From positions 2,046,001-2,110,000 of the forward strand of contig NC_088812.1 in NCBI RefSeq assembly GCF_011386835.1: a DNA stretch of 64,000 nucleotides, in the 5' to 3' direction. Under the pieces are notes generated by a model. It was not told where the DNA came from. It did no database searches and saw only the letters and a program-made list of their open reading frames with translations. This DNA comes from Chrysemys picta bellii (lineage: Eukaryota). Below are positions 5,167 through 64,000 of this stretch, in pieces. Position 1 is the first letter of the stretch; every line of letters begins with the position of its first letter. The position numbers and the translations under genes are program-made.

Positions 5167-5384
5167 NNNNNNNNNNNNNNNNNNNNNNNNNNNNNNNNNN
5201 NNNNNNNNNNNNNNNNNNNNNNNNNNNNNNNNNNNNNNNNNNNNNNNNNNNNNNNNNNNNNNNNNNNNNNNNNNNNNNNNNNNNNNNNNNNNNNNNNNNN
5301 NNNNNNNNNNNNNNNNNNNNNNNNNNNNNNNNNNNNNNNNNNNNNNNNNNNNNNNNNNNNNNNNNNNNNNNNNNNNNNNNNNNN
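5167..5384. other. Assembly gap (218 N)
   Basis: Run of N, with (GATA/GACA)n on the right flank. Confidence 1.
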
Positions 5385-7738: not shown

Positions 7739-8064
7739 NNNNNNNNNNNNNNNNNNNNNNNNNNNNNNNNNNNNNNNNNNNNNNNNNNNNNNNNNNNNNN
7801 NNNNNNNNNNNNNNNNNNNNNNNNNNNNNNNNNNNNNNNNNNNNNNNNNNNNNNNNNNNNNNNNNNNNNNNNNNNNNNNNNNNNNNNNNNNNNNNNNNNN
7901 NNNNNNNNNNNNNNNNNNNNNNNNNNNNNNNNNNNNNNNNNNNNNNNNNNNNNNNNNNNNNNNNNNNNNNNNNNNNNNNNNNNNNNNNNNNNNNNNNNNN
8001 NNNNNNNNNNNNNNNNNNNNNNNNNNNNNNNNNNNNNNNNNNNNNNNNNNNNNNNNNNNNNNNN
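7739..8064. other. Assembly gap (326 N)
   Basis: Run of N followed by an imperfect (TG)n. Confidence 1.
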
Positions 8065-29209: not shown

Positions 29210-31255
29210 TGGCAGTTTTTCAAAGAGACATTATTAAGGGCACAAGAGCAAACTATGCCACTGCATAGGAAAGATAGGAAGTCTGGCAAGAGACCACCCT
29301 GGCTTAACCAGGAGATCTTCAATGATCTAAAACTCAAAAAAGAGTCCTACAAAAAGTGGAAACCTGGTAAAATTACAAAGGACGAATATAAACAAATAAC
29401 ACAAGTAGGCAGGGACAAAATTAGAAAAGCCAAGGCACAAAACGAGATCAAACTACCTAGGGACATAAAAGGAAACAAGAAAACATTCTACAAGTACATT
29501 AGAAGCAAGAGGAAGGTCAAGGACAGAGTAGGCCCGTTACTCAATGAGGGGGGAAAGACAATAACAGAAAATGTGGAAATGGCAGAGGTTAATGACTTCT
29601 TTGTTTCGGTTTTCACCAAGAAGGTTGGTGGCGATTGCACGTCTAACATAGTGAATGCCAGTGAAAATGAGGTAGGATCAGAGTCTAAAATAGGGAAGAA
29701 ACAAGTCAAAAATTACTTAGACAAGTTAGATGTCTTCAAATCACCAGGGTCTGATGAATTGCATCCTAGAATACTCAAGGAGCTGACTGAGGAGATATCT
29801 GAGCCATTAGCAATTATCTTTGAAAAGTCATGGAAGATGGAAGACATTCCAGAAGACTGGAAAAGGGCAAATCTAGTGCCCAACTATAAAAAGGGAAATA
29901 AGGACAACCCGGGGAATTACAGACCAGTCAGCTTAACTTCTGTACCTGGAAAGATAGTGGAGCAAATAATTAAGCAATCAATTTGCAAACACCTAGAAGA
30001 TAATAAGGTGATAAATAACAGTCAGCATGGATTTGTCAAGAACAAAGCATGTCAAACCAAACTGATAGCTTTCTTTGACAAGGTAACAAGCCTTGTGGAT
30101 GGGGTGAAGCGGTAGATGTGGTATATCTTGACTTTAGTAAGGCTTTTGATACAGTCTGGCGTGACCTTCTCATAAACAAACTAGGGAAATACAACCTAGA
30201 TGGAGCTACTATAAGGTGGGTGCAAAACTGGTTGGAAAATGGTTCCCAGAGAGTAGTTATCAGTGGTTCACAGTCATGCTGGAAGGCCATAATGAGTGGG
30301 GTCCCGCAGGGATAGGTTTTGGGTCCAGTTCTGGTCAATATCTTCATCGATGATTTAGATAATGGCATAGAGAGCACACTTATAAAGTTTGCGGACGATA
30401 CCAAGCTGGGAGGAGTTGCAAGTGCTTTGGAGGATAGGTTTAAAATTCAAACTGGAGAAATGGTCTGAAGTAAATAGGATGAAATTCAATAGGACAAATG
30501 CAAAGTACTCCATGTAGGAAGGAACAATCAGTTGCACACTTACAAAATGGGAAATGACGGCCTAGGAAGGAGTACTGGGGAAAGGGATCTGGGGGTCATA
30601 GTGGATCACAAGCTAAATATGAGTCAACAGTGCAACGCTGTTGCAAAAAAAGCAAACATCATTCTGGGATGTATTAGCAGGAGTATTGTAAGCAAGACAC
30701 GAGAAGTAATTATTCCGCTCTACTCCATGCTGATTAGGCCTCAGTTGGAGTATTTTGTCCAGTTCTGGGCGCCACATTCAGGAAAGATGTGGACAAATTG
30801 GAGAAAGTCCAGAGAAGAGCAACAAAAATGATGAAAGGTCTAGAAAACATGAGGTATGAAGCAAGATTGAAAAGAATTGGGTTTGTTTAGTCTAGAGAAG
30901 AGAAGACTGAGAGGGGACATGAGGACAGTTCCCAAGTACATAAAAGGTTGTTACAAGGAGGAGGGAGAAAAATTGTTCTTCTTAACCTCTGAGGACAGGA
31001 CAAGAAGCAATGGGCTTAAATTGCAGCCAGGGCGGTTTAGGTTGGACATTAGGAAAAACGTCGTAACTGTCAGGGTGGCGAAGCACTGGGATAAATTGCC
31101 TGGGGAGGTTGTGGAATCTCCATCGTTGGGGATTTTTAAGAGCAGGTTGGACAACCCCCTGGCAGGGATGGTCTAGACCATACTTAGTCCTGCCAGGAGT
31201 GCCGGGGACTGGACTAGATGCCTCTTGAGGTCCCTTCCAGTCCTGTGATTCTGTA
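29210..31255 (+). mobile_element. 5'-truncated CR1 LINE of about 2 kb, with a disrupted ORF2 reverse transcriptase
   Basis: Motifs [34 protein letters not shown] and KFADDTKL are split by stops and frameshifts. Ends in the CR1 3' UTR (GGTCCCTTCCAGTCCTGTGATTCT). Confidence 0.95.
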
Positions 31256-47700: not shown

Positions 47701-50700
47701 CTGAGAGGCAGGAGCTAGGTCAACTGAAGAATTCTTCTGGGGACCTAGCCGCTCCTTTGAGGGTTTGGTCAGCATAGCTACAGTACTCAGCAACCTAGCG
47801 AGGTCGAGCTAAATTGTAAGTGTAGACGGGGCCAAGGCATGCTTTACAGGCTCTTTACTGATTTTTAACTATTTCAGGTGTCCTTATTTCTTACTGAAAT
47901 AATTATCCCAGTGTAACCCATAGCGTGGATGCTGTTAGGATAACCTTTAGTTCTTATCAATAGATCACAAAGGAGATAGGGAAAGTGAGGTACAAGAAGG
48001 ACTTGCCCAAGGTCACCCAGCAGGGCAAAGCTGGGAAGAGAACCCAGAGCTTCCAAGTCCCTGGCCAGTGCGCTCTCCACTAGACCACACTGCCTCCCCT
48101 TATCTGTGCCTCATACCAGTATGGCTTGGTCCCTTTGTCAGGCTTGACAAAGCCCTGGCTGGGATGATTTAGTTGGGGATTGGTCCTGCGTTGAGCAGGG
48201 GGTTGGACTAGATTCCTCCTGAGGTCCCTTCCAACCCTGAGATTCTATGATTCTTTCCAATAAGGGAATAGCTGTACCAGGAGAACTGCCCACAGTAGGG
48301 GGCAGTGCCACGTTAACTGTACCAGGGCAAACCAATACAAAAAGCTGTACAAAAACAGTTAGCCCACTCCTAAAAATCTGTCCCTCTTAACAAGTAGCTT
48401 TTGCTCTTGTGTTGTCATTAACACGAGCTCTGTTCCCAGCCTTCCAACAGGCAGGACCTGAATTTAGAACCTAAATAACAAGGCAGAAAAATACTTTCTG
48501 AAGGGGCATTTCTCAACCCTTTCAGGATGGTGGCACCTACCTAGATGTCAGATTTTCATGACCACCCTCTAAACCAGGGGTCGGCAACCTTTCAGAAGTG
48601 CTGGGCCGAGTCTTCATTTATTCACTCTTAATTTAAGGTTTTGCGTGCCAGTCATACAGTTTAACGTTTGTAGGTCTTTCTAGAAGTCTATAATATTTAA
48701 CTAAACTGTTGTATGTAAAGTAAGGTTTTTTAAATGTTTAAGCTTCATTTAAAATTAAATTAAAATGCAGAGCCCCCTGGACCCGTGGCCAGGACCCGGG
48801 CAGTCTGAGTGCCACTGAAAATCAGCTCACGTGCCACCTTTGGCACACGTGCTGTAGGTTGCCTACCCCTGTCTAAACCGACTGTAAGAGGGGAAAAAAA
48901 AGTATCGGCTCAAACCTTATAGAATGTGTGTTTGGAGAGGCCGACTGACAATCTGACCTTGAAGGGAGAGGGAGTGAGATTTTCTTGGCTTTCAGTCCAC
49001 GCTCACAACCTGCCCCCAAGTGACCGCTCTTTGTGCGCTCTGGGGCTCAGGACCTGGCACATACCTGCTTTTCCTCCCTCAGTGGGTTGCTTTTAAAGCT
49101 CAAACTGCCTGAACCATCAGACTGATTCTCTACCCCCCCCCCCCCCCCCCACTGTCACAAGTGCCAAGATGTTAACCGCTGTACTTGGCTGCCAGTGACC
49201 CTTCCCTGAAGCTGTTTCTGCTGTTGTCTTGCAGAGTGGCCCGCCGGGTCCCCCTGGCCCAGGAATGCCCCCTGGAGGCAGAGGCCGTGGCCGAGGGCAG
49301 GGTAACTGGGGGCCTCCTGGAGGAGAGATGACCTTCTCGATCCCTACTCACAAGTGTGGGCTGGTCATTGGCAGAGGTGAGTGTCCTTTGCCATCATACA
49401 GCGGTTCCCGGTGTCTCCCCCGCCGCCGCTCCAGCAGAGCCCGAGCTCACAGCTCCACGCTCTCTTCCAGGCGGGGAGAACGTCAAAGCCATAAACCAGC
49501 AGACGGGGGCGTTCGTCGAGATCTCCCGGCAGCTGCCTCCCAACGGAGACCCCAACTTCAAACTGTTCATCATCCGCGGCTCCCCGCAGCAGATCGACCA
49601 CGCCAAGCAACTCATCGAGGAGAAGATCGAGGTGGGTGCGGGGAGTGCCCCCAGCTTCCACCTACCCCCACAGCGAGGGGGCAGCAGAGCACTGGAGGCT
49701 GACCCGGGGCATCGTGGCTCTCAGCACTTACGGATTATTTCCTCTCTCCAGGGCCCCCTCTGCCCAGTTGGACCTGGGCCTGGGCCTGGAGGGCCCCCGG
49801 GCCCTGCTGGCCCAATGGGCCCTTTCAACCCAGGACCTTTCAATCCAGGGCCACCAGGAGCTCCCCCTCAGTAAGTATTGAAATCTCCTGCCTCTTCGGG
49901 GGGGCGGGGGAGGGAGTGCACGACATGCTGCAAAAAGGTGCTTGTGGGCTGTCTTTAAGGGGGTGGACTGAGCAATAAATCCAGGGGCATCTGGTGGCCT
50001 GACAGGGGCTGCTCCCCTAGTGCCCAGGGAATCCCCTATAGTGTCTAGTGCCCGAACTTTGGACCATCCTTTCAGTCTGGAAGCAAGAAAAAAAATAACC
50101 CTAAGTTCTGCTGAGGAAGCTGCCAGCCAAAGGCCCTGCTCCTCCTGGCCTGTTCAGCCTGCGAGTGCCCCGGGTGGGGAAGATGGGAGACGGGCTAAGC
50201 CTGCAGAGACCTGGTGCCGGAGCTTGATGGACCACAAGCAGGGCTGCAGGGAAGAGTGGTCTTGGGCTTGCCCTTCGGTGGAGGTGTAAAATAGGTGGGG
50301 GTAACCCCACCAGCTCTCCAGTCAGCCGGCCTCTTCCCATCCTCGAGAGCTGTGCAGCACCAAGGAGCCCTGTCACTACCCTGGAGCCTGCCGTGCCAGG
50401 CCCTGCACAAACACAGACCAAAGCCTCCGTCCGTCAAAGGGACCCGCTAAGGCCCATCTGGCTCTTGTGGGCTGCCTGTCCCCCACTGGGGCTGCAGCAG
50501 GGCTCCGAGGACCATGCTTTGGGGAGATGAGCAGGGGGCTGCCCCAGCTGTACAGGGGCCTTCCCACCCTCCCAGTCAGCATGTCCCAGCGGGGTTCTGC
50601 TCCTCCCTCTGCAGTGCCTTCTGTCACCCCTCCTCATCAATGTCTCCTGCTCTCCTCTTTCAGCCCTGGGGCTCCTCCCCCCCACCCATACCCACCCCAA

Positions 50701-53281
50701 GGCTGGGGGAACACCTACCCGCAGTGGCAGCCTCCGGCCCCTCATGACCCAAGTAAGTACCCAGCGCTGCCCCTCGCGAGGGTAGGGTTGGCTCCGGGGA
50801 GCAGGTGGGCGGGCAGCCCTGTTCCCCACATGCTGGCCCAGGGCAGGAGGCGGGGTCTGTTCTCATACATGGCTCCTTTCCAGGCAAAGCAGCAGCGGCA
50901 GCAGATCCCAACGCGGCCTGGGCAGCGTACTACTCGCACTACTACCAGCAGCCCCCTGGCCCTGTGCCCGGGCAGCCACCAGCTCCCACAGCGCCCCCCG
51001 TTCAGGGCGAGCCGCCGCAGCCGCCCCCGGCCGGGCAGTCCGACTACACTAAAGCGTGGGAGGAGTATTACAAAAAACTAGGTAATGCCCTGGGGGAATC
51101 ATTTCGCCTATAGCGGGGAGGAGGGGGCACTATCCCGGGTGAAGAGTGCTGTGCTGGAGGGCAGCAGTGAATCGAGGGGCTCAGCCCAGCTCCTTGTGAC
51201 CCCAGGACTGACGCTGACAGGCCCTACGGCAAAGGCTGAGCCTTGAGGGTCCTGAGGACTGAGCTCCAGAGGCAGGTACCTCTTGCTCAGGGCTGAAGCA
51301 GACTGGCCTGGCCGCACGCATGGGTGGGTGGGTGGGGGGGGTGTTAGTGACAGGCCATGGGCTGATTTCCCCAGCACTGAGCAGTCAGATCTGTTCTGAG
51401 AGGGAAGGTCTCTGAGGTCAGGTGGAGAAAGGAGCATGGGGCAGACCCAGCAAGTTAGCAATGTGCCCCACAGAATCCGTGTGAACTTCCCCAGCCAGAG
51501 ATGCCAGTTCATGCTGGTCTCAACCCCACTAGGCAAAGGGGGCAGTGATACTGCCTGACTCCTCCTCCCTCTCCAGCTGCTCACTCCCTCGCCCACCTGT
51601 CCGGGGTCCCTAATGCATGTCTCTGCCCACAGGCCAGCAGCCCCAACAGCCCGGGGCACCCCCACAGCAGGACTACACGAAAGCCTGGGAGGAATATTAT
51701 AAGAAACAAGGTGAGTGAGGCCTGGAGCTCCTATGGACGGGGGTGGGTGTGTGGATCAGCAAGGAGAGCCCAGCTCCTGTCCGCTGACCATTGGAGACCT
51801 GGGGAGAGGGGTAGCCCTGTGCCCCTGGAGTCACTGACTCACCCCCTCTTCTCTCCCCTGCCCCATCGTAGCAGCTCAAGTGGCTACTGGTGGAGGACCA
51901 GGGGCACCACCGGGACCTCAGCCAGACTACAGCGCAGCCTGGGCAGAGTACTACAGACAGCAGGCTGCCTACTACGGACAGACACCGGGGGCTGGGGGCC
52001 CAGTGCCGCCACCCACACAGCAGGGACAGCAGGTGAGTGATCGGCCATGTGCCCCGCTGCCTGCCTTCAACCCCCAGCTGTAGCTCCTCCTGCCTGGGTG
52101 AGACCCTCGGTCCCACAGGAAGTGCTTCCTGAGCGGCATCTTTGTGCTCGTGCACCGGCTCCCACATCGGTCGTCGACGGGGATTCAACCCAGGACACCT
52201 CGACCTACAAGCATGAGCGTCTACTGCTTGAGCTAAAGGACCCAGTCCATTAGCTGGAGGCAGTAGTAGACTCGTAAACCTCTTCTATGGATCCGCCACT
52301 AGGTGGCAACACAGACCCACGCTGTTCATGTGGATTTACGTTGACCCGTAGACACCTGGGGGGGTGGTCGGAGGAGATGGGAGCTCAGGGAAATGGACAG
52401 AACTGGTAAGATTCTCCAGTTTCCACTGGGCTCTTAGCTCCGGCTCACAGGTCCATTTTCAGGGGCTAGGACTTCTTCGTAGGGTTAGGGGTTGTCTTAT
52501 CCATTGGGGGATGTGGGAGGGATCACTGTTAGCCCTGGTAGTTCGGGGAGATCGGGCTGCAGAGCTGTCGGAATACAGCGAGCGTCAAACCAGGGGAACT
52601 CGTTCAAAGAGAACCTGGGTGCAGATTCCTACGTTTCTGACCAGCTTCTCCTCTCGAAGGTGAGCGCACTCGGCAGCGCTGGACTGAAAGCGGCTGTTCG
52701 CTGACCCAGGGAGCTAGATTAGCTCCCGCTCAGCCTCTAGCCTGTCCTGCTGCAGCTCTCAGAGTCTCGGGCCTAGCGCCAGGCTGAGCAGTTACATTCT
52801 AGGGCCGCAGAAGCCTAAAAATCCGGTTTCAGCCACATTTAGGCACCTGACTAAGTGACTTTTCCAGCAGCACCTGGTGACTTCACTTGGTCTTGCTAGG
52901 GGCTCCGTGCCACTTACTTAGCTGCCTAAATATGCCGAATTTCAAGCAGCCCCCTTTAGAAATGCTTCCCCAGGCCAAGACTTTCATCTGATCTTCAGGA
53001 CTGACCAAAGCTGCTGCTTCCGAAACCTAGATTCTCTTCCAGACTTGACCTGCCAATTTCCCCTTTTCAAACACCCTGCTTCCGTGGTGGGATTTCCTAG
53101 TGTGCAGGGGAGTTGGGAGCCGAGGGCCAGTTTTCCCTCCACTCCCCAACTTGGCAGCGCAGTGCCAGTGCCGTTGCAGCAGAGGGGACCCTGTGTTGCT
53201 TTCGGACTCTTCCGTCCGTAGCGGTGTCTATCAGGGGTAACTGACTCCTGTCTCTCTCCCCGATCCTTGCAGGCTCAGTGA
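32712..53281 (+). CDS. KHSRP: KH-type splicing regulatory protein (FUBP2), 694 aa; join(32712..32912,37843..37939,38526..38564,38893..38932,39512..39561,40853..40924,41668..41725,42798..42969,43974..44072,45764..45862,46052..46154,46981..47081,49235..49376,49471..49631,49752..49870,50664..50752,50884..51081,51633..51710,51875..52032,53273..53281)
   Basis: 20 exons total 2085 nt with consistent phases. Gly/Pro-rich N-terminus ending [15 protein letters not shown], four KH domains with GxxG loops (IGRGG, IGKGG, IGRSG, IGRGG), Tyr-rich repeats ([12 protein letters not shown]), terminal AQ*. Confidence 0.97.
33000..33960 (+). repeat. G-rich low-complexity repeat at the start of KHSRP intron 1
   Basis: Recurrent GTGTGGGTTATGGGGGGAGGGCGGATAAGATGGGGGG units. 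Confidence 0.85.
42270..42470 (-). mobile_element. hAT-type MITE, partial copy (KHSRP intron 7)
   Basis: Ends in AGGTTGCCGACCCCTG, the reverse complement of the terminal inverted repeat of the 48575-48871 copy. Confidence 0.8.
44235..44621. mobile_element. hAT/Charlie (MER5-like) non-autonomous DNA transposon
   Basis: Terminal inverted repeats CAGCGGCTCTCAAC / GTTGAGAACCTCTG. Flanking 8-mers CTTTATTG and CTTTAGTG match 7/8, consistent with a target-site duplication. Confidence 0.8.
44640..44726. mobile_element. Short retroelement insertion (probably a Penelope-like end) with a 17-bp target-site duplication
   Basis: The insert is flanked by TTTAGTGGTCAGTGGTT at 44623-44639 and 44727-44743. 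The family call is from recall. Confidence 0.65.
48138..48253 (+). mobile_element. CR1 extreme 3' end
   Basis: Reverse complement of the 1747-2122 terminus, ending GAGATTCTATGATTCT. Confidence 0.85.
48575..48871 (+). mobile_element. hAT-type MITE (KHSRP intron 12)
   Basis: Terminal inverted repeats CAGGGGTCGGCAACCT / AGGTTGCCTACCCCTG. TCTAAAC is present on both flanks (7 bp of an expected 8-bp duplication). Confidence 0.85.
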
Positions 53282-55907: not shown

Positions 55908-55913
55908 TTTATT
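55908..55913 (-). terminator. Polyadenylation signal of the adenylate kinase-like gene
   Basis: AATAAA on the minus strand about 52 nt past the TAG stop. Confidence 0.7.
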
Positions 55914-55965: not shown

Positions 55966-58900
55966 CTAGCGGAGGCTGTCGATGACCGAGCAGCACTTTG
56001 CGAAGATGGTGTCTTCCGGCTCCTCGCCAATAATCTGCAGGACACAACAGAGCAGCTGGGGGGAGCAGCCCATGCCATGGGGCCCGGCCAGCCCCCAGCT
56101 CTATTCCCCTGCCCCTGGCATGAGTACCCGCCCCCTGGGAAACTTGGGTGCGCCTGTGCTGGGGGCAGGCAGCACTAGCCCTGCTCAGAACCGCTGGGTG
56201 GTTGCAGCTTTCGGGCAGCCCCGGCTGACACTGAACTCCTACGCGGGCTCGCTCTGGCCCTCTCCCCGCCCCGAGGGGCCTGCCCACGCACTCAGCCCCT
56301 GGAGGATGTTTCCACGCGCCTGGTGAGCGGAACCCAACATCCTGCTAACCCGGGGGTGGGTGAAGCTGTTGGCAGAGGCTGTGCCAGGGAAGGGGCCCTA
56401 ACCCCTAGTTCAGAGGGGCAGGGCTGCCTGCAATGGGCTCTGCTGGGAAGGGGGAGGGTCTGTCTCGGGCCACCCCCCACCTACGTTTCTGAGCAGGTTC
56501 TTCTGTTGGTAGTAGCTGATGACGGGCTCGCACAGCGAGTAGTGAGTCTCCAGCCGCTGGCGGATGCAGCTCTCGTGGTCGTCGGCCCGATGGCCGGTCT
56601 GGCCCCGCAGCAGCAGCCGCTGGATCATGGTCTCCGTCGAGCAGTCCAAGACGATCACGAAGTTGGGAAGACGCCCCACCTGCGGCATGGTAACGCCCCG
56701 TTCAGGGGGGCAGCAGCACCCGGACAGGCTGCTCCCTGGCCAGACACCGGAGGGGGGAGCTGAGGAATGGGCACCAGGACGTTCCCGTGCAAGGCGAGAG
56801 GATGGGGTGGGGGCAGAGGCCCTGGAGAAGGGGGAGCCGGGCCAGTGCCAGCCCATGACGGAGCCCTCCTGGGTCTGAGTTAGGGAAGGGGGGAGAAGTG
56901 GCTGCGTCTCCAGCATGTGCTCAGCCCCTCTGAATGCCTCATGCTGCCTCCCACGTGCCACATCTACCTCCTGGGTGTCAACACAGCCCACCCCCCGCTC
57001 TGGCCAGGGGCTGCTGGGCCTTCCTCCCCCCGTGGCACTTACCACGCGCTCAAAGTCCTTGGCCTGGTTGAGCTCCCGGGGGAAGCCATTGACCAGGAAA
57101 CCCTTCGCCTCCTCTCTCTGCAGCAGGTTCTCGTTCAGCAGGTCGAGGACGAAGCCCTGGGGAGACAGGAGCCCCCTCAGCGCTGGGGGGTAAGGGCTTT
57201 GGCCGGAGCCACCCCTGGCTGCGTGAGCAAGCGCCCCACCTCCCCCTGCCCACGAGCCTCCGGCTCCAGGACTCCAGACCCCCACTCAGCTCCTGGCCTC
57301 TCCCAGGTGCCTGCTAGTGGGGCGGGCCGAGCCCCAGCAAACCTCTTCCACCAGGCACCAGCTGGGCCGGAGCCAGAGCGGGGAAAGGAGGTGGGAGAGG
57401 GATGAGCGGGGCTAGGTATGGCAGGGGGCAGAGCCGGGAGCCTGGCACTTGCAGAGGGTGGTGAGAGCCAGCGGGCGGCTGATCCCTGCAGCCCGGGGGA
57501 AGGCTCTCACACTCGCAGGGCTCTTTTGCAGCCTTGGAACGTTTCTCAGGGCCCCTAGGAAGGGCCAGGTGCTGAGCTGATGAGTGGGAGCTGGGGGTGC
57601 TGCAATCCGGAAGGGAGGGAGGGAGGGGAGCCTCACTGAAGGCACGAGCGCTCCTTTCAGCATGATGTCCTTGATTTGTCGCCCCTGGCGCGTGGGCTCG
57701 CTGGCTTCCGCCCGCAGCAGGTTCCCCATGCCCAGGTGCTGGAACTGGTACTTGGCAGCCAGCCTCTCGCACTGTGTCCCTTTGCCGGAGCCTGGGCCTC
57801 CTATCACGAAGATGATGATTTGCGACTTCAGCATCTCTGCGGCGAGAGACAGAGGTTGGGCAGGGGAAGGGGTGAGACAAGCATCTCCCAAGGCGCATTG
57901 GACAAGCCTGATGCTGCGCAGTTTGAGGAGATCCCAGCCCAGAGTGGGGTGGCTGTGGGCACAAAATAGGCACGATTGCTGCTGCTCGATGGGGAAAATA
58001 AGCTAAGGGGAAGGGACCTGGCATGCCCGGCAGTGGGTACTGAGCTAGATGGACCTTGGTCCGGTCCAGTGTGGTAACATCCCCATCTCAACCATGCAGT
58101 AGACATCAGCTCCTGAAAACCCTCGTTAATTTAGTGCGGGGCTGACTGCCCTGGAGCCTCCTCTGTAAGTATCCCACTACTGCCACCAATGTGCTTCAAC
58201 CCAGCCCTGGAGAGACCCCTCTTGTGGCAAGCTCGCTCTCTGTGGCCCACCGCCCACCCCCATAAGGGGCCCATTAGGTGGATTTGGGGCTGTCCCCATT
58301 AGGAACTAGAGTCGCCACGCTGGCTGATGGGAGTCACAGCTTGAGCCCCTCTGGTGTCAATGCCCAGGAATGGCAATGGTAGAACCAGGAGCAGAATTTG
58401 GGCCAAGGCCTTTCAGTCACTGCCAGCTGTTACAAAGCAGCCACCTCGCTGGGACCTGCCCCCGTGAGCAAGGCCTCTGAGAAAAGCCAGGGTTAAAATG
58501 CCTGCTGAGCTGTTTATAAAACAGGGGGTTTGGTGTGAACCGGCCACCCCATAAATCGCATTCAATCATTCTCTAGAGACATCTCTACTCTGTACAATGA
58601 ACAAGCAGCCGGGGCAGTTAGGGGCTCCATAATGCCCCTCAGCTACCACGAGGGGCCAGATAAGAACACAGATGGGAGAACCAGCTGAGCTCTGTTCATT
58701 TCTAGCCGGGATAAATCGGTGGAGGAGCCGGGCCTGACCGTAAACCTGTGAAGAGAGCCCCTAGAAAACCCAGCCCAGCCGCTCCAGCGCAGTCGTTTGA
58801 AGCTACTGAGTGGTGTTCTTTCTCCAAAGGAATTTAGTGCTGTGAACAGGCTTGGGCTGGTAACCCAGGGCTCGGCATTTACCTATGCAGACACGCTGCG

Positions 58901-59598
58901 CTGCCGGCACTCGCTGCCACATGCACATCCCCTTCCCTGGCCCAGATGGACACACACACACTGCCACTCCATGTGCACCCATCTCCTCCCTCGGACTTTC
59001 TGCGCCAAGCAGGGAATGAGTTTTGATCATCACCCACGGGAGCTGGATTCCAGGTGTCGAGGCCGGGCTGGTGGGTTTCACCCCCCAATGCTCCCTTCGA
59101 GCCAACATCCAGCGTCCCTAGTGCAGTGAGATCAGGGTACGCCCCGGACCAGCGTCTTCCCCCTACATCCCAGCCAAGCTAAAGTGCTGCTAGCAAATAT
59201 GCACGGTTTTCCTCCTGGAGCCAAACGCCTTCTGTTGACCTGCTGGCCGAAGCAAGAGTTCCCGGAAGAGTCATCCGGTAACAAGACAGCAAATTAAAGC
59301 CTCCATCAGGGCCCAGCATCTCCATTGCTTGGGCGGATTTGTCCCTTCCCAGCCTTCTCTCAGCTCTAGAGACCCCACTAGACCCCACTCCCCTCCCAGA
59401 GCTGGGAATGGAACCCAGAGCCCTGGCTCCCTGGGCTCTAACCAGCAAGACATACCCACCCCTTCCTACATTTTGATGCCCCTGAAAGCACAGAAAGCCC
59501 CACCCCGCCATGTCCCCAGAGCCAGCTCGCCCTTTACCCTGCAGTTCAGGATTCAGAGGCTTGGCAGTTTTAGGAAGCCGGGCCTGGCAGAGTCCCAT
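55966..59598 (-). CDS. Single-domain adenylate kinase-like protein (AK1/AK5 family), 212 aa; complement join(59538..59598,57637..57836,57043..57156,56485..56679,55966..56034)
   Basis: P-loop IFVIGGPGSGKGTQC, GALVP, GFLVNGFPRE..Q, short LID RLLLRGQTGHRADD...RLETHY, C-terminus SVIDSLR*. Splice sites are GT-AG with consistent phase (639 nt). The four downstream exons are secure; the first exon (MGLCQARLPKTAKPLNPELQ, strong Kozak, phase-1 donor) is inferred. Confidence 0.85.
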
Positions 59599-60055
59599 CT
59601 TCCAGGGCACAGACCGTTCCCCCGCTGCACTCCCTTCCCGGGGGGCCCCCCCAAGGTGCTGGCCTGGCCTGCAGCCCTCAAGCTCCTGTGGAAAACTAAT
59701 CTGGCCATTTTAGCCCGGGCCCTGCTGCTTAGCCGGATGGGCTTTCTGATGTCACAAGGCAGCCAGGCGCTGGCCTGTCGCCGAGGACAGGAGCAGCTGA
59801 GCGGGTGCCGGGATGCGCGGGGGCGATTCCAGGCGGTGCTGGGAGTGGGAGGAGGCCGGAGCACGTGGCCTAGTGACCCGAACGATAGAACCAGGACACC
59901 TGGGACCCCTCCCAGCTCGGCGACTCGCTGGGCCTCAGTTTCCCCCAGGGGAGGGGGCTAGATTCCCGGCTCCGAGATGTCCGGACGGGCCGAGTGACCC
60001 CGTCTGCCCCCCCAGACTGCGGGCAAGAGGCAGGAGAAGGGCCCAAGGAGACCCA

Positions 60056-60960
60056 CCCCTGGGGGCGACGGGCCCCGTCCTCCCCTCCCCCCACCCCTGG
60101 GGGCGACGGGCCCCGTGCCCCCCCTTCCCCCACCCCGGGGGGTGACGGGCCCTGTGCCCCCCCCTTCCCCCACCCCTGGGGGCGACGGGCCCCTGTGCCC
60201 CCCCTTCCCCACCCCTGGGGGCGACGGACCCCGTGCCCCCCCCTTCCCCCACCCCGGGGGGCGACGGACCCCGTGCCCCCCCTTCCCCCACCCCGGGGGG
60301 TGACGGGCCCTGTGCCCCCCCCTTCCCCCACCCCGGGGGGCGACGGGCCCCGTGCCCCCCTTCCCCACCACTGGGGGCGACGGGCCCTGTGTCCCCCCCT
60401 CCCCCCACCCCGGGGGTCGACGGGCCCTGTGCCCCCCCCTTCCCCCACCCCGGGGGGCGACGGGCCCCGTGCCCCCCCTTCCCCCACCCCGGGGGGTGAC
60501 GGGCCCTGTGCCCCCCCCTTCCCCCACCCCTGGGGGCGACGGGCCCCTGTGCCCCCCCTTCCCCACCCCTGGGGGCGACGGACCCCGTGCCCCCCCCTTC
60601 CCCCACCCCGGGGGGCGACGGACCCCGTGCCCCCCCCTTCCCCCACCCCGGGGGGCGACGGGCCCTGTGTCCCCCCCTCCCCCCACCCCGGGGGGCGACG
60701 GGCCCTGTGTCCCCCCTCCCCCCACCCCTGGGGGCGACGGGCCCCTGTGTCCCCCCCTTCCCCCACCCCTGGGGGCGACGGGCCCCTGTGTCCCCCCTCC
60801 CCCCACCCCGGGGGGCGACGGGCCCTGTGTCCCCCCTCCCCCCACCCCTGGGGGCGACGGGCCCCTGTGCCCCCCCTTCCCCCACCCCTGGGGGCGACGG
60901 GCCCCTGTGCCCCCCCTTCCCCCACCCCCGGGGGGCGACGGGCCCTGTGCCCCCCCCACA
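60056..60960. repeat. GC-rich minisatellite, about 39-40-nt unit, about 23 copies
   Basis: Unit approximately CCCCCCTTCCCCCACCCC(T/G)GGGGGCGACGGGCCC(C)TGTG. C-rich on +, G-rich on -. Confidence 0.97.
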
Positions 60961-60969
60961 CCCCAGGCG

Positions 60970-61230
60970 GTGATAGCTGACCCCCCCCCCATGCCGCCGT
61001 GGGGTAACTCCGCCCCTTTTCCCTGGGTGGCGGGGCACGGCCGTGCAGGTTCCCATAGCAACCAACAAGGGAGGCCTACTTCCGGTGCCAGGAGGCTCCG
61101 GCTTCCGGTCATGCGCGGTGAGCGGCGCACGCGCAGGCAGCCGCTCGGCAATTGGTCTGGACCGGGCGCGGGGCAGCGTCCAGCGGGGCCGGCGGAGGTC
61201 GCGGCTCGTGCGTGGCAGGTGGGGGCGGGT
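60970..61230. promoter_or_regulatory. CpG-island promoter between the divergent AK-like and GTF2F1 genes
   Basis: X-box GTTCCCATAGCAAC (61049-61062), two ETS/GABP cores CTTCCGGT (about 61079-61109), NRF1-like GCGCACGCGCA (about 61126-61136), inverted CCAAT (about 61151), candidate donor CAG|GTGGGG at 61218/61219. Confidence 0.75.
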
Positions 61231-61259
61231 AAAGGTCACGGGGGCAGGGGTCATTGGGG

Positions 61260-62050
61260 GCAGGGGGGCTGAGGGAGGCTGGGGATATGGGTCACTAGGG
61301 TAGGGGTGGGGGGAAGGTGGCTGGGAATGGGGGGCTGGAGGGGAGGGGTCACTAGGGGTGGGGGAGGGAGGCTGGGGATGGGGGGGAAGTGGCTGGGGCT
61401 GGGGGGCTGGTGGGGGAGGGTCACTGGGGTGGGGGAAGGTGGCTGGGAATGGGGGGCTGGAGGGGAGGGGTCACTAGGGGTGGGAGAGGGAGGTTGGGGC
61501 TAGGGGGGGAAGTGGCTGGGGGTAAGGGTCACTGGGGTGGGGGAAGGTGGCTGAGGATTGGGGGATGGTGGGGGAGGGGTCACTAGGGGTGGGGGAGAAG
61601 GAGGTTGGGGCTGGGGGGGAGGTGGCTGGGGGTAAGGATCACTGGGGTGGGGGAAGGTGGCTGGGGATGGGGGGCTGGTGGGGGAGGGAGGCTGGGGGTA
61701 AGGGTCACGGGTGGGGGAGGGAGGCTGGGGCTGGGGGGCTGGGGGGGAAGTGGCTGGGGGTAAGGGTCACTGAGCTGTGGGAGGGAGGCTGGGGATGGGG
61801 GGCTGGTGGGGGAGGGAGGCTGGGGGTAAGGGTCACTGGGGTGGGGGAAGGTGGCTGGGAATGGGGGGCTGGTGGGGGAGGGAGGCTGGGGGTAAGGGTC
61901 ACTGAGGTGTGGGAGGGAGGCTGGGGATGGGGGGCTGGTGGGGGAGGGAGGCTGGGGGTAAGGGTCACTGGGGTGGGGGAAGGTGGCTGGGAATGGGGGG
62001 CTGGTGGGGGAGGGAGGCTGGGGGTAAGGGTCACTGAGGATGGGGGCTGG
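61260..62050 (+). repeat. G-rich degenerate tandem repeat in the probable GTF2F1 5' UTR intron
   Basis: Recurrent GGGGTAAGGGTCACTGGGGTGGGGGAAGGTGGCTGGG and GGGGGGCTGGTGGGGGAGGGAGGCTG blocks. Confidence 0.9.
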
Positions 62051-62581
62051 TGAGGATGGTTGGTACTGGGAGGGGCTCTGAGTGGAGCATGAGGTCTGGG
62101 GCTCGGCATGATGTGACATGGGGGGGGCTGTGGCTGGAGGGGATGCCTGCTTGTTGCCGGGCTGTGGAGTGGAGAGCGGGGTGTGTGGTGGGACAGAGCG
62201 AGGGGGAGATGCTGAGCCATGGGGTGCTGCGGGAGGGGCATCAGAGGTATGTGGTGATTGTTAGGGGAATTCTTTAAAATTCCTGATGTCATTCAAGGCC
62301 TCTGCATGCAATTTAACCCTCCTAGGGCCTGGAAGGAAACATCCTGGGGGAGGGCCGGGCCGTGGAACTGGGCACACGAGACACTGGTTCAGTATTGTGT
62401 CTTGGCTTTATACCTTTGTCCAGTATCATTCCCAGCACCAACCAGCAGACCCCTGGTTCCCCCTCCCAGCCCCGCGCGGGTTCCTGCCAGTGCTTGCTCT
62501 GCTAACCTGCTGGAAACACTGACTATTTTTTCTCTCTTAGAGCCTTTCCTGGAAGCCCAGGTGGACACGTGCAGGGTCAAA

Positions 62582-63750
62582 ATGACCTCCCTGGTAAGTT
62601 CTCAGTTTCCTCTAAGTCATTGTAGGTTTGGGAAATGTGCCCTGTCTCCTTGGCCTAGACTGATACCCATCTAGTTCGGGATCCAGTCTCCGAGTGACTC
62701 GTCCTGAGTGTCCCAGAGGAAGCTGCCAACCCCTCATCGCCTGTCAACTCTTCTTATGTGAAAATCCCTCCCTGACCCCAGCTAATGCCCTGAAGCAAGA
62801 GGACAGAGAGCCCTTATTAATTTCTCCCCCTCTCCTGTGTCCCCGACCGTGATCGGGGAGGGGAACTCCCTGACTAGCCCTTGGGTACCGCACACCTCTG
62901 AAATGAAACCTCACTCTTTGTTCTCTCCCCAGGGCACGAGTAGCCAGTCGGTTACAGAGTATGTGGTGCGAGTACCCAAGTGAGTCCTTTCTCTCTGATT
63001 TCCCAGCCCTCTCTGCCCACGCGGCGCCTGGCTGAAAGCTCATCTCCCTGGGGAAAACAGACAGCCACAGTTTAAGATGTCAGAGCGGAGGTGGGGGAGT
63101 GTCCCCTGCATTGCTGGGTCAAATCAAGCTCAGGTCACTGTTCTCTGACAACGGATGAACTGAGCTGTAGGCCTCGGCCCCTCTCCCTGGCTATCCAGCC
63201 TCTGGTTTGTTTGATCTAAACACTATGCTTCCTGCTGAGCCCGAGGCCACGTCTCTTTGGAGTATTATGGTGATTCCCCAATTGAGATCAGGGTCCTGCC
63301 CTGAAGAGCTTGCAGTTTAAATAGACAAAGGGTGGGAAGGGAAACTGAGGCACGGCGCGGGACTGTGGTTTGCCCAAGATCACCCAGGTGCGCAGGGCAG
63401 GGAATTGAGCCACGCCGCCTGTTGTATCGGATCGATCCTACTGCACCCTGTGGTGGGTTCAGTACAGAGACGGGGGCCTGACAGGGAGGGGGGTCGGGCA
63501 GGGCTGAGGCCTGCTGGCAGCAGGGATTGGGTAGCCCTGCTGCCCGGGTGCGATTTGCTGTGTGGCTAGCGAGTGCTCGGCATAGTGCCAGGCTTCCAGC
63601 AGGGGGTGTGGGGATGTCACTCACTCCTCGAGCTGGAGCTGCTGGCCGCTCAGGTGTCTGCCCTCCTCTTGCTGCAGAAACACACCCAAGAAGTACAACA
63701 TCATGGCCTTCAACGCCGCCGACAAGGTCAACTTCACCACCTGGCACCAG
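62582..63750 (+). CDS. GTF2F1: General transcription factor IIF subunit 1 (RAP74), first three coding exons; join(62582..62593,62933..62979,63678..63750), continues beyond the window
   Basis: MTSL|GTSSQSVTEYVVRVPK|NTPKKYNIMAFNAADKVNFTTWHQ matches the RAP74 N-terminus. GT-AG sites with consistent phase. KHSRP is its neighbour, as in human. Confidence 0.95.
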
Positions 63751-64000
63751 GTAGGATGCCCCCGAGCCCCACATGGCCAGGGCAGCCTGCCCGCTGCTTG
63801 GAGGCACTGCCAGGTGCCGGAGCTCCCTTAGCGCTGACGGCCTGGCCACTCCAGCGGGGTGGATCGATAGTTGTGACTGCATCTGGGGCCGGGCCTGGCA
63901 GCAAGGCTAGAAATACTGGGCACAGCGCCCCCCCCATAATGCACTGGACCACAGGGCAGCCTCTTGCTTCCCCACCATGCTGGGGAACACATCTGGGCCC

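What the first reader, a model, noticed from the sequence alone, without database searches (positions are those of the whole stretch)
57043..57836. AK-like protein has Asn at the Mg2+-binding Asp and a remodelled AMP pocket
Seen: the canonical DG(Y/F)PR motif reads NGFPR (AAT codon at 57088-57090), and HLSTGDLLR reads HLGMGNLLR (57721-57732). The P-loop Lys and the residues equivalent to AK1 R44, R97, Q101, R128, R132, R138, D140, D141 and R149 are all kept. Established: AK1 Asp93 coordinates Mg2+ and is important for catalysis, and Thr39 lines the NMP site. Inference: this may be a nucleotide-binding, weakly catalytic sensor or pseudo-enzyme, or a kinase with changed metal or NMP specificity.
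Basis: partly seen in the sequence, partly recalled or inferred. Interest (0 to 1): 0.7.

Follow-up and report, generated by a model that had tools for sequence, protein, structure and literature searches.

The report
Turtle adenylate-kinase paralogue with Asn at magnesium site
A turtle gene for a little-studied, probably membrane-anchored relative of adenylate kinase 1 really carries Asn where these enzymes almost always have the magnesium-positioning Asp; the change is old, fixed and under selection, so it is biology and not an error, but its effect on activity is untested.

Summary
AAT at 57090-57088 (minus strand) encodes Asn at the AK1 Asp93 position. GMGN at 57732-57721 replaces STGD. 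K21, R44, R97, Q101, R128, R132, R138, D140, D141 and R149 are all kept.

The window is turtle DNA, not human. The finding covers exons 2-3 of a five-exon, 212-codon gene lying between a TFIIF-alpha gene and a KHSRP-like gene. An upstream exon encodes MGLCQ, a myristoylation/palmitoylation-type start.

The gene is an uncharacterised paralogue, auto-annotated "adenylate kinase isoenzyme 1-like". I found it in salamanders, turtles, alligators, lepidosaurs and mammals. It forms its own clade beside AK1 and AK5.

- **The pocket change is ancestral:** a hydrophobic residue at Thr39 occurs in all 56 orthologues checked.
- **The Asn is derived:** it occurs in 19 of the 20 hard-shelled cryptodiran turtle species sampled (Ser in Mauremys mutica). 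Softshells, side-necked turtles, alligator, geckos and most mammals have Asp. Mustelids gained Asn independently; most squamates have Glu; tuatara has Ser.
- **Selection persists:** dN/dS among Asn-bearing turtles is 0.07-0.28.

The most likely reading is a membrane-tethered kinase with weakened Mg2+ positioning, not a dead gene. A nucleotide-sensor or pseudo-enzyme role is not excluded. Interest is moderate.

The parts
59538..59598 (-). Coding exon 1: ATG at 59598-59596, MGLCQARLPKTAKPLNPELQ plus the first base of a split Glu codon. Donor GT at 59537-59536. Carries a Gly2/Cys4 lipidation-type N-terminus.
   Evidence: Sequence. Identical 20 residues in Emys, Malaclemys and Gopherus orthologues. 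M1 and G2 are invariant and C4 is at least 90% conserved in 32 orthologues. The PROSITE-style myristoylation pattern (recalled) matches 33 of 36 N-termini tested.
57637..57836 (-). Donor GT at 57636-57635.
   Evidence: Pfam ADK 65.2 bits against a cutoff of 26.8. PDB AK1 chains match at E about 2e-20 to 5e-19.
57775..57801 (-). P-loop GGPGSGKGT (AK1 G15-T23), canonical.
   Evidence: K21 is invariant in 56 orthologues.
57721..57732 (-). G-M-G-N in place of AK1 S38-T39-G40-D41, within HLGMGNLLR (57738-57712).
   Evidence: The Thr39 position is L, M, V or I in all 56 orthologues. The Asp41 position varies (Q, N, E, D, S, H, R).
57043..57156 (-). Coding exon 3: GFVLDLLNENLLQREEAKGFLVNGFPRELNQAKDFERV. 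Acceptor ccccag at 57157-57162, donor GT at 57042-57041.
57088..57090 (-). AAT = Asn at the AK1 Asp93 / E. coli Asp84 position (the outer-sphere Mg2+ anchor), followed by the invariant Gly.
   Evidence: Codons: AAT in the window and Dermochelys, AAC in Emys, GAC in Emydura, GAT in Alligator.
56485..56679 (-). Coding exon 4: short LID region with R128, R132, R138, D140, D141 and R149 equivalents all present.
55966..56034 (-). Coding exon 5: IIGEEPEDTIFAKCCSVIDSLR plus TAG (55968-55966).
   Evidence: The C-terminus is conserved from salamander to mammals.
55908..55913 (-). AATAAA polyadenylation-type hexamer about 50 nt after the stop codon.
   Evidence: Read directly. Inference only.
49356..51113 (+). 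Exons of the convergent neighbour gene, KHSRP/FUBP-like: a KH_1 hit in ORF 49356-49874 and an FUBP_C hit in ORF 50805-51113.
   Evidence: The same neighbour is annotated in the Emys locus L001. The window is collinear with L001.

Best explanation
**What it is.** The finding sits in exons 2 and 3 of an intact five-exon, 212-codon gene on the minus strand of a turtle genome. The gene is a distinct vertebrate paralogue of AK1, auto-annotated "adenylate kinase isoenzyme 1-like" and called AK1L here. It lies head-to-head with a TFIIF-alpha gene and tail-to-tail with a KHSRP-like gene.

**Shown.**
- It has the AK1 fold.
- It keeps the P-loop, all phosphate-clamping Arg/Lys residues, the adenine-reading Gln101 and the LID Asp pair.
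- It carries a conserved MGxC N-terminus.
- Its NMP pocket differs from AK1 in every orthologue (Thr39 to Leu/Met/Val/Ile; Gln65 to Ala/Leu).
- The Mg-site Asp became Asn once, on the stem of the hard-shelled cryptodiran turtles. It has been kept since under purifying selection.

**Inferred.**
- The protein is N-myristoylated and palmitoylated and works at a membrane, like the AK1-beta isoform.
- It still binds ATP and AMP and transfers phosphate, but more slowly. Asn can still hydrogen-bond the two Mg-bound waters, but without the negative charge Mg2+ is placed less precisely.
- The selected role is therefore local, low-flux adenine-nucleotide equilibration or sensing rather than bulk AK activity.
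For: **Gene model.** All four introns are GT-AG and the frame is open.

**Identity.** Pfam ADK scores well above cutoff on both ORFs. The closest solved relatives are vertebrate AK1 chains. The AlphaFold2 model of the near-identical Malaclemys orthologue has pLDDT 92.4 and superposes on human AK1-Ap5A 1z83 (TM 0.95, rmsd 1.3 A, 45% identity).

**Orthologues and synteny.**

**Phylogeny.** The AK1L clade, including salamanders, has support 98/91. It lies inside a vertebrate clade with AK1 and AK5 domain 2 (99/96).

**Site pattern.**
- Asn in 19 of the 20 hard-shelled cryptodiran species sampled.
- Asp in Pelodiscus, Carettochelys, Emydura, Pelusios, Alligator, geckos, salamanders and most mammals.
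- K21, R97 and Q101 are invariant across the 56 orthologues.
- R44, R128, R132, R138, D140, D141 and R149 are kept in at least 52 of the 56.

**Selection.** Pairwise dN/dS among Asn-bearing turtles is 0.07-0.28 (Fisher p from 2e-4 to 1e-6 for fewer non-synonymous changes). There is synonymous AAT/AAC variation in the Asn codon itself.

**Cost of losing the carboxylate.**
- E. coli D84A: kcat falls from 330 to 1.8 per s, Km rises from 70 to 470 uM, and no Mg density is seen. Mg still accelerates catalysis without the Asp (PMC11313852).
- Human AK1 D93A loses more than 90% of activity (PMC9138365).

**Lipidation motif.**. Membrane-bound myristoylated AK1-beta is a precedent (PMC2680645).
Against: - No activity, metal-binding, lipidation or expression data exist for this protein in any species.
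- An AK1 T39V mutant was reported to lose most function (PMC3537612). Every AK1L has a hydrophobic residue there, so the whole paralogue may already be a poor AMP kinase.
- The Mg-site residue changed at least five times in AK1L (Asn twice, Glu once, Ser twice). Alligator has Trp at the R44 position, and squamates vary the P-loop G22/T23. This pattern would also fit a function that does not need efficient catalysis.
- Conserved Arg and Lys residues are needed for nucleotide binding as well as for catalysis.
- dN/dS shows that the protein matters, not that it is a kinase.
Confidence: 0.55

Rival explanations
1. Nucleotide sensor or pseudo-enzyme. AK1L binds ATP/ADP/AMP and opens and closes like an adenylate kinase, but its selected output is a conformational or scaffolding signal at the membrane. 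Turnover is dispensable, which is why the Mg-anchoring Asp can be replaced.
For: - The Asp position was replaced repeatedly within one paralogue: Asn in turtles and again in mustelids, Glu in non-gecko squamates, Ser in tuatara and Mauremys mutica.
- In other AK domains the position is about 90% Asp.
- A hydrophobic residue at Thr39 occurs in all members, and AK1 T39V is reported as nearly dead.
- Alligator has R44W. The Asp41 position, which I recall as part of the lid-NMP salt-bridge zipper, varies freely.
- Purifying selection persists nevertheless.
Against: - Every residue that contacts the transferred phosphate (K21, R44, R97, R128, R132, R138, R149) and the LID D140/D141 pair has stayed nearly invariant since the amniote lineages diverged. 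That is more than simple binding would seem to need.
- Most lineages, including the salamander outgroup, keep Asp.
- Glu keeps the carboxylate, and Asn keeps the hydrogen-bond acceptor.
Confidence: 0.22
2. Changed substrate or metal preference. The remodelled NMP pocket and the uncharged Mg-site residue retune the enzyme towards another NMP/dNMP or another divalent ion such as Mn2+.
For: - S38-T39-x-D41 and Q65 are all changed.
- The GFPR (Phe, not Tyr) form of the motif recurs in the UMP-CMP kinase-type hits listed.
- From memory of the human CMPK1 sequence, that enzyme also has a non-Thr residue at the Thr39 position and Glu at the Asp41 position.
- Fold search places UMP/CMP kinases close by (TM about 0.9).
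Against: - Gln101 is the residue I recall as reading adenine N1/N6 in AKs and as Asn in UMP-CMP kinases. It is invariant in all 56 AK1L sequences.
- The tree puts AK1L with AK1/AK5, far from UMP-CMP kinases.
- Nothing here tests metals.
Confidence: 0.12
3. Gene in decay. AK1L is dispensable and drifting towards a pseudogene in turtles, and the Asn is simply a tolerated loss-of-function hit.
For: - The gene was not seen in birds, frogs, fish or anthropoid primates among the word-search hits.
- It evolves faster than AK1, with long AK1L branches in the tree.
- An older Chelonia assembly shows a 4-codon deletion in exon 3.
- Mustelids also lost Cys4.
Against: - The five-exon frame and all splice sites are intact in the window.
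- dN/dS is 0.07-0.28 with p at or below 2e-4 inside the Asn clade.
- The Asn codon shows synonymous change only.
- Predicted full-length 212-residue proteins exist in the turtle families for which a 212-residue model was retrieved, including the newer Chelonia assembly (P0160).
- Only four diagnostic substitutions lie on the stem where Asn arose.
Confidence: 0.06
4. Sequencing or assembly error at 57090 (true codon GAT).
For: None beyond it being a single transition.
Against: The same Asn occurs in independent assemblies of 19 hard-shelled cryptodiran species, with two different Asn codons.
Confidence: 0.01

Closest known systems
Cytosolic adenylate kinase 1 (AK1; solved structures 1z83, 2c95, 3adk, fish AK1 5x6k/5xru)
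   Same: - Same short-LID fold (TM 0.95, rmsd 1.3 A to 1z83).
- Same length class and P-loop.
- R44, R97, Q101, R128, R132, R138, D140, D141 and R149 are all present.
   Different: - Only about 45% identity.
- It is a separate gene at another locus (between the TFIIF-alpha and KHSRP-like genes) and forms its own clade.
- Thr39 is hydrophobic, Gln65 is Ala/Leu, and the motif has Phe instead of Tyr.
- In this turtle the residue at Asp93 is Asn.
- The lipidation-type first exon is constitutive.
AK1-beta, the p53-inducible, N-myristoylated, plasma-membrane isoform of AK1
   Same: - Both have an extra N-terminal exon beginning MG..C placed in front of an AK1-type core (AK1-type examples: P0329 Xenopus MGSGCS and P0331 MGACCS).
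- Membrane targeting by myristoylation is documented for AK1-beta (PMC2680645).
   Different: - AK1-beta is a splice form of the AK1 gene with a canonical active site.
- AK1L is a separate gene in which this form is the conserved one.
- Lipidation of AK1L is inferred from sequence only.
AK5 (two-domain brain adenylate kinase) and its degenerate domains
   Same: - About 45% identity to AK5 structure 2bwj.
- AK5 domain 2 groups with AK1L in the tree, weakly (93/77).
- Catfish AK5 domain 2 also lacks the Asp (Ser) and the R44 equivalent (Cys). That is a natural precedent for eroded AK sites.
   Different: - AK5 has two AK domains plus an N-terminal region I recall as a dimerisation/docking-like domain, and no MGxC start.
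- The AK1L/AK5 sister relation rests on a very long catfish branch.
E. coli Adk D84A and human AK1 D93A laboratory mutants
   Same: The same position loses its carboxylate. They give the only quantitative guide to the likely cost: about 180-fold in kcat for E. coli and more than 90% of activity for human AK1.
   Different: They carry Ala, not Asn. Asn keeps a carbonyl oxygen that can accept hydrogen bonds from Mg-bound waters. I found no D-to-N data.

Membership tests
Adenylate kinase family (Pfam PF00406 ADK), short-LID AK1 type | Profile match above the curated threshold | tested here: met
   ADK scores 65.2 bits (ORF with exon 2) and 60.8 bits (ORF with exons 3-4) against a cutoff of 26.8.
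Adenylate kinase family (Pfam PF00406 ADK), short-LID AK1 type | P-loop GxPGxGKGT with the catalytic Lys | tested here: met
   GGPGSGKGT at 57801-57775.
Adenylate kinase family (Pfam PF00406 ADK), short-LID AK1 type | Signature motif hhh-D-G-[FY]-P-R-x3-[NQ] with the Mg-anchoring Asp (PROSITE adenylate kinase signature, pattern recalled from memory) | tested here: not met
   The motif reads FLV-N-GFPR-ELN-Q. Only the Asp is missing. Asp is present in softshell and side-necked turtle orthologues.
Adenylate kinase family (Pfam PF00406 ADK), short-LID AK1 type | Phosphate-clamping Arg set and LID Asp pair (AK1 R44, R97, R128, R132, R138, R149, D140, D141) | tested here: met
   All are present by alignment to solved AK1 chains and are kept in at least 52 of 56 orthologues.
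Adenylate kinase family (Pfam PF00406 ADK), short-LID AK1 type | AK1 three-domain fold (CORE, NMP-binding, short LID) | tested here: met
   AlphaFold2 model of orthologue P0154 has pLDDT 92.4. Best PDB match is 1z83_A, TM 0.95 and rmsd 1.3 A. The window's own joined protein was not folded.
Adenylate kinase family (Pfam PF00406 ADK), short-LID AK1 type | AMP + MgATP = ADP + MgADP activity | not testable with these tools
   No biochemical data were found for any AK1L.
AK1 orthologue group (the gene encoding cytosolic AK1) | Groups with vertebrate AK1 in a tree | tested here: not met
   AK1L forms its own clade (98/91), separate from the AK1 rows.
AK1 orthologue group (the gene encoding cytosolic AK1) | NMP motif HLSTGDLLR with Thr39 | tested here: not met
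   The motif is HLGMGNLLR. The Thr39 position is hydrophobic in all 56 AK1L sequences.
Dually acylated (N-myristoyl plus S-palmitoyl) membrane proteins | Met-Gly start fitting the N-myristoyltransferase pattern G-{EDRKHPFYW}-x2-[STAGCN]-{P} (recalled) with a nearby Cys | tested here: met
   MGLCQAR fits. 33 of 36 AK1L N-termini tested fit the pattern and 33 of 36 have Cys4.
Dually acylated (N-myristoyl plus S-palmitoyl) membrane proteins | Lipid actually attached, with membrane localisation | not testable with these tools
   This rests on the sequence motif only.

The most novel reading that the evidence does not exclude
AK1L would be a third, overlooked vertebrate sister gene of AK1 and AK5. 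From memory of the human map, each of the three lies next to a FUBP-family gene, which would fit an origin in the early vertebrate genome duplications. Its selected job would be nucleotide sensing at a membrane rather than bulk catalysis. It would then be a natural adenylate-kinase pseudo-enzyme, or a near-dead enzyme, that has given up the Mg-anchoring carboxylate several times independently.

A sharper variant concerns the sequence context. The new Asn is always followed by the invariant Gly, and Asn-Gly is the most deamidation-prone dipeptide. The turtle and mustelid proteins could therefore be made nearly inactive and slowly switched on as Asn deamidates to Asp or isoAsp, acting as a built-in timer.
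Probability: 0.15. Interest if true: 0.65.

Novelty: new variant of a known kind. Interest (0 to 1): 0.42.

Why it matters
Adenylate kinase is a textbook model for Mg-dependent phosphoryl transfer. The Asp studied here is one of its most conserved residues, and removing it costs about two orders of magnitude in kcat in the laboratory.

This is a natural, long-lived replacement under selection. It arose twice as Asn and also as Glu and Ser, in an otherwise intact and probably membrane-anchored paralogue. It offers ready-made pairs for asking how much precise Mg placement a cell really needs: softshell (Asp) against hard-shelled turtles (Asn), and pinnipeds (Asp) against mustelids (Asn).

It also draws attention to a tetrapod adenylate kinase gene with no literature. 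It is only auto-annotated. A gene of that name was listed in 2026 among novel transcribed rat genes. I did not see it among anthropoid or bird hits, which may be why it has been ignored.

Tried and rejected
- **Sequencing error:** rejected by cross-species codons.
- **Human origin of the window:** rejected. The best hits are turtle proteins at 98% identity, and the window is collinear with an Emys orbicularis chromosome at about 94%. No contig that I took for human was fetched, and I did not look for a human copy.
- **Rfam scan of the window:** no hits.
- **Pfam on large ORFs around the gene:** nothing except one weak RVT_1 hit and the KH_1/FUBP_C exons.
- **Exhaustive representative search with an AK1L profile:**
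  - It was meant to test absence outside amniotes.
  - Its top 150 was swamped by multi-domain AK repeat proteins whose scores add up. It therefore cannot support any claim of absence from birds, frogs or fish.
  - It did supply the salamander orthologue and the AK1/AK5 rows for the tree.
- **Literature searches:** searches for "Asp93", "adenylate kinase isoenzyme 1-like", "AK1-like" and "Ak1l" found no study of this gene.
- **Compensatory changes:** I looked for changes accompanying Asp-to-Asn. Only four diagnostic substitutions lie on the stem of the Asn-bearing turtles, and none is at a known active-site position.
- **Model geometry:** side-chain contacts of Asn and Met could not be inspected, because model coordinates are not exposed to scripts.
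- **Joined window protein:** Natural orthologues P0002 and P0154 served as full-length proxies.
- **dN/dS method:** it was summed exon by exon without building a joined sequence.
Full report
**1. What is in the sequence**

The region is eukaryotic and spliced, and the gene lies on the minus strand.

| Exon | Coordinates (minus strand) | Length |
|---|---|---|
| Coding exon 3 | 57156-57043 | 38 aa |
| Coding exon 4 | 56679-56485 | 65 aa |
| Coding exon 5 | 56034-55969 | 22 aa, then TAG |

All introns are GT-AG, and an AATAAA follows at 55913-55908.

- The Asn codon AAT is at 57090-57088.
- G-M-G-N is at 57732-57721.

I aligned each exon to solved AK1 chains, using 8x1g_A, which I take to carry native numbering.

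- The Asn falls at AK1 Asp93, the Met at Thr39 and the second Asn at Asp41.
- K21, R44, R97, Q101, R128, R132, R138, D140, D141 and R149 are all present.

**2. The gene is larger than the finding**

Orthologous proteins are 212 residues long and begin MGLCQARLPKTAKPLNPELQE.

- That peptide is encoded at 59598-59538, with a GT donor. It joins the cag|AG acceptor at 57836.
It starts only the predicted 191-residue isoforms such as P0156.
- The full gene therefore has five coding exons and 212 codons.

Natural orthologues stood in for the full-length protein.

**3. Whose genome, and which locus**

The window is not human.

- Exon 2 is 98% identical to proteins of Terrapene, Emys and Gopherus.
- Exons 1-3 are identical to the Malaclemys protein. 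Exons 2-3 are also identical to Trachemys.
- The window is collinear with an Emys orbicularis chromosome at 83-95% nucleotide identity (about 94% across the gene and its downstream flank), introns included.

In Emys the gene is flanked head-to-head by a gene whose product hits TFIIF_alpha. It is flanked tail-to-tail by a KH/FUBP_C gene. The same KH_1 and FUBP_C exons are in the window at 49.4-51.1 kb on the plus strand. A Pogona gene model fuses this kinase to ALKBH7 (P0120).

From memory of the human map, ALKBH7-GTF2F1-KHSRP is the 19p13.3 gene order. AK1 lies near FUBP3 on 9q34 and AK5 lies near FUBP1 on 1p31. This suggests three sister genes from the early vertebrate genome duplications. 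It is a lead recalled from memory, not a test.

**4. What family it is**

- **Pfam:** ADK matches both ORFs well above threshold.
- **Orthologues:** a word search with the Emys protein found orthologues annotated "adenylate kinase isoenzyme 1-like". They occur in turtles, alligators, many squamates, tuatara, monotremes, marsupials and many placentals, including rodents, mustelids, strepsirrhines and others.
- **Salamanders:** the exhaustive profile search added Lissotriton and Pleurodeles.
- **Tree:** an IQ-TREE analysis of 41 AK domains recovers this group, AK1L, as one clade with support 98/91. It sits inside a vertebrate clade (99/96) that also holds AK1 and AK5 domain 2. Tunicate, arthropod and mollusc AK1-like proteins and plant UMP-CMP kinases lie outside. 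The AK1L/AK5-d2 pairing (93/77) rests on a very long catfish branch and should not be trusted.
- **Structure:** an AlphaFold2 model of the Malaclemys orthologue has pLDDT 92.4 and pTM 0.90. It superposes on human AK1-Ap5A (1z83; TM 0.95, rmsd 1.3 A) at 45% identity, and it is also about 45% identical to AK5.

I found no paper on this gene. A 2026 rat telomere-to-telomere paper lists an "adenylate kinase 1-like" on chr9 among novel genes with IsoSeq support (PMC13477028). I did not verify that this is the same locus.

**5. Which of the odd features are old and which are new**

I compared 56 AK1L sequences.

- **Thr39 position:** always Leu, Met, Val or Ile.
- **Gln65 position:** Ala or Leu in 53 of 56.
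- **Motif aromatic:** always Phe.
- **Asp41 position:** varies freely (Q, N, E, D, S, H, R).

The "remodelled AMP pocket" is therefore a hallmark of the whole paralogue. It is already partly present in salamanders, which have HLSMGDLLR.

The Mg-site residue was Asp ancestrally. Its distribution is as follows.

| Residue | Lineages |
|---|---|
| Asp | Salamanders, Alligator, geckos, monotremes, marsupials, most placentals, softshells (Pelodiscus, Carettochelys), side-necked turtles (Emydura, Pelusios) |
| Asn | 19 of the 20 hard-shelled cryptodiran species sampled: emydids, geoemydids, tortoises, Platysternon, Chelydra, sea turtles including Dermochelys |
| Asn, gained independently | All mustelids sampled; pinnipeds and panda keep Asp |
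| Glu | Non-gecko squamates |
| Ser | Tuatara, Mauremys mutica |

On the accepted turtle phylogeny (established knowledge) this means one Asp-to-Asn change on the stem of the hard-shelled cryptodires.

The codons are GAC in Emydura, GAT in Alligator, AAT in the window and Dermochelys, and AAC in Emys. The Asn has therefore been kept through a synonymous change.

For comparison, I counted 326 AK-type motifs from the representative search. Asp made up 293, Glu 15 and Asn only 2, and one of those two is probably a turtle copy of this gene.

**6. Is the gene alive?**

I computed Nei-Gojobori counts summed exon by exon. Within the Asn-bearing clade the values are:

| Pair | dN/dS |
|---|---|
| window - Emys | 0.07 |
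| Emys - Dermochelys | 0.21 |
| window - Dermochelys | 0.28 |
| Dermochelys - Chelonia | 0.07 |

- Against Emydura the values are 0.18-0.29, and against Alligator 0.11-0.16.
- The deficit of non-synonymous change is significant in every pair inside the Asn clade (p from 2e-4 to 1e-6).
- K21, R97 and Q101 are invariant, and R44, R128, R132, R138, D140, D141 and R149 are kept in at least 52 of the 56 AK1L sequences. The most notable exception is Alligator with Trp at R44.
- Only four substitutions are diagnostic of the stem where Asn arose, and none is at a known catalytic position.

The gene is under purifying selection and is not a pseudogene.

**7. How it most likely works**

*Established.* In E. 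coli Adk the equivalent Asp84 does not touch Mg2+. It holds two of the four Mg-bound waters and is itself held by Gln28, which is usually His in other AKs. The D84A mutant behaves as follows (PMC11313852):

- it loses Mg density;
- kcat drops from 330 to 1.8 per s;
- Km rises from 70 to 470 uM;
- Mg still gives a large rate gain without the Asp.

In human AK1, D93A loses more than 90% of activity and T39A only 20-40% (PMC9138365). Another study reports T39V as nearly inactive (PMC3537612).

*Shown here.* The His (AK1 H36) is kept, and everything that clamps the phosphates is kept.

*Inferred.*
- Asn can still accept hydrogen bonds from the Mg waters but lacks the charge. Mg2+-ATP should therefore bind with looser positioning and give a slower, not dead, kinase.
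- The conserved MGxC start fits the N-myristoylation pattern in 33 of 36 sequences tested, with Cys4 in 33 of 36. It resembles the membrane-bound AK1-beta isoform (PMC2680645). The protein probably works at a membrane, where low-flux local equilibration or sensing of adenine nucleotides could tolerate a slow enzyme.
- Gln101, which I recall as the adenine-reading residue, is invariant. AMP is therefore still the likeliest acceptor.

**8. Rivals**

- **Sensor or pseudo-enzyme.** This fits the repeated loss of the carboxylate, the hydrophobic Thr39 position and the Alligator R44W. It cannot be excluded, because Arg and Lys conservation serves binding as well as catalysis.
- **Changed NMP or metal preference.** This is possible but not favoured, given Gln101 and the tree.
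- **Gene decay and sequencing error.** Both are disfavoured by the selection and cross-species data.
- **Deamidation timer.** This is a speculative extra. The Asn is always followed by the invariant Gly. Asn-Gly is the classic fast-deamidating dipeptide (established chemistry, recalled). Slow post-translational reversion to Asp or isoAsp is conceivable and testable by mass spectrometry.

**9. Limits**

- There are no biochemical, lipidation or turtle expression data.
- Absence from birds, frogs, fish and anthropoid primates is only "not seen".
- I did not look for a human copy, by instruction.
- The N runs at 5167-5384 and 7739-8064 were left alone.
- Model coordinates could not be inspected for side-chain geometry.

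**10. Verdict**

It is a new natural variant of a known enzyme kind, and its interest is moderate. It offers natural Asp/Asn pairs for a classic catalytic question and flags an unstudied AK gene. Nothing here shows an unusual mechanism.

Noticed in passing
window 59598-59538 (minus strand): The upstream exon encodes MGLCQARLPKTAKPLNPELQ. A Gly2/Cys4 dual-lipidation-type start is conserved from salamanders to mammals in this paralogue, and AK1 itself has MG..C isoforms (Xenopus P0329, P0331).
   Followed up: partly
window 59707-59705 (minus strand): An upstream ATG (MARLV...) that extends the Gopherus and Terrapene gene models in frame lies 109 nt before the MGLCQ ATG here, so it is out of frame. 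It may act as an upstream ORF, depending on where transcription starts.
   Followed up: no
window 60000-64000: A very GC-rich stretch (0.68) lies between this gene's first exon and the divergently oriented TFIIF-alpha gene seen in Emys locus L001. It looks like a shared bidirectional CpG-island promoter.
   Followed up: no
window 49356-51113 (plus strand): Exons of a KHSRP/FUBP-like gene (KH_1 and FUBP_C hits), convergent with the kinase gene.
   Followed up: partly
window 29255-30115 (plus strand): A 286-residue ORF with a weak reverse-transcriptase (RVT_1) hit below the Pfam cutoff, probably a retroelement remnant.
   Followed up: no
window 5167-5384 and 7739-8064: Two runs of N (assembly gaps or masked sequence). 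They were left untouched.
   Followed up: no
L004 (Alligator mississippiensis) 1583-1777: The Alligator orthologue keeps Asp at the Mg site but has Trp at the AK1 Arg44 position and Ala at Gly22 (HLSMGRVLW, GKAT). This is a different erosion of the same active site.
   Followed up: partly
proteins P0067, P0075, P0164-P0186 (Mustelidae): All mustelids sampled have NGFPR, like the turtles. Their full-length forms also read MGLWTS, so the palmitoylation-type Cys4 is lost. Pinnipeds and giant panda keep DGFPR.
   Followed up: partly
protein P0275 (Hemibagrus AK5), residues about 373-567: The second AK domain of catfish AK5 has Ser at the Mg-site Asp and Cys at the Arg44 position. This is another naturally degenerate vertebrate AK domain.
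   Followed up: no
L005 (Chelonia mydas, older assembly) 1605-1706: Exon 3 shows a 4-codon deletion and several changes in this older assembly. The newer Chelonia protein (P0160, 212 residues) is full length and carries the intact GFLVNGFPR motif, so this is likely an assembly or annotation artefact.
   Followed up: partly
PMC13477028, Table 4: The 2026 rat telomere-to-telomere paper lists "adenylate kinase 1-like" (chr9:6.77 Mb) among novel genes with long-read RNA support. It is possibly the rat orthologue of this gene.
   Followed up: partly
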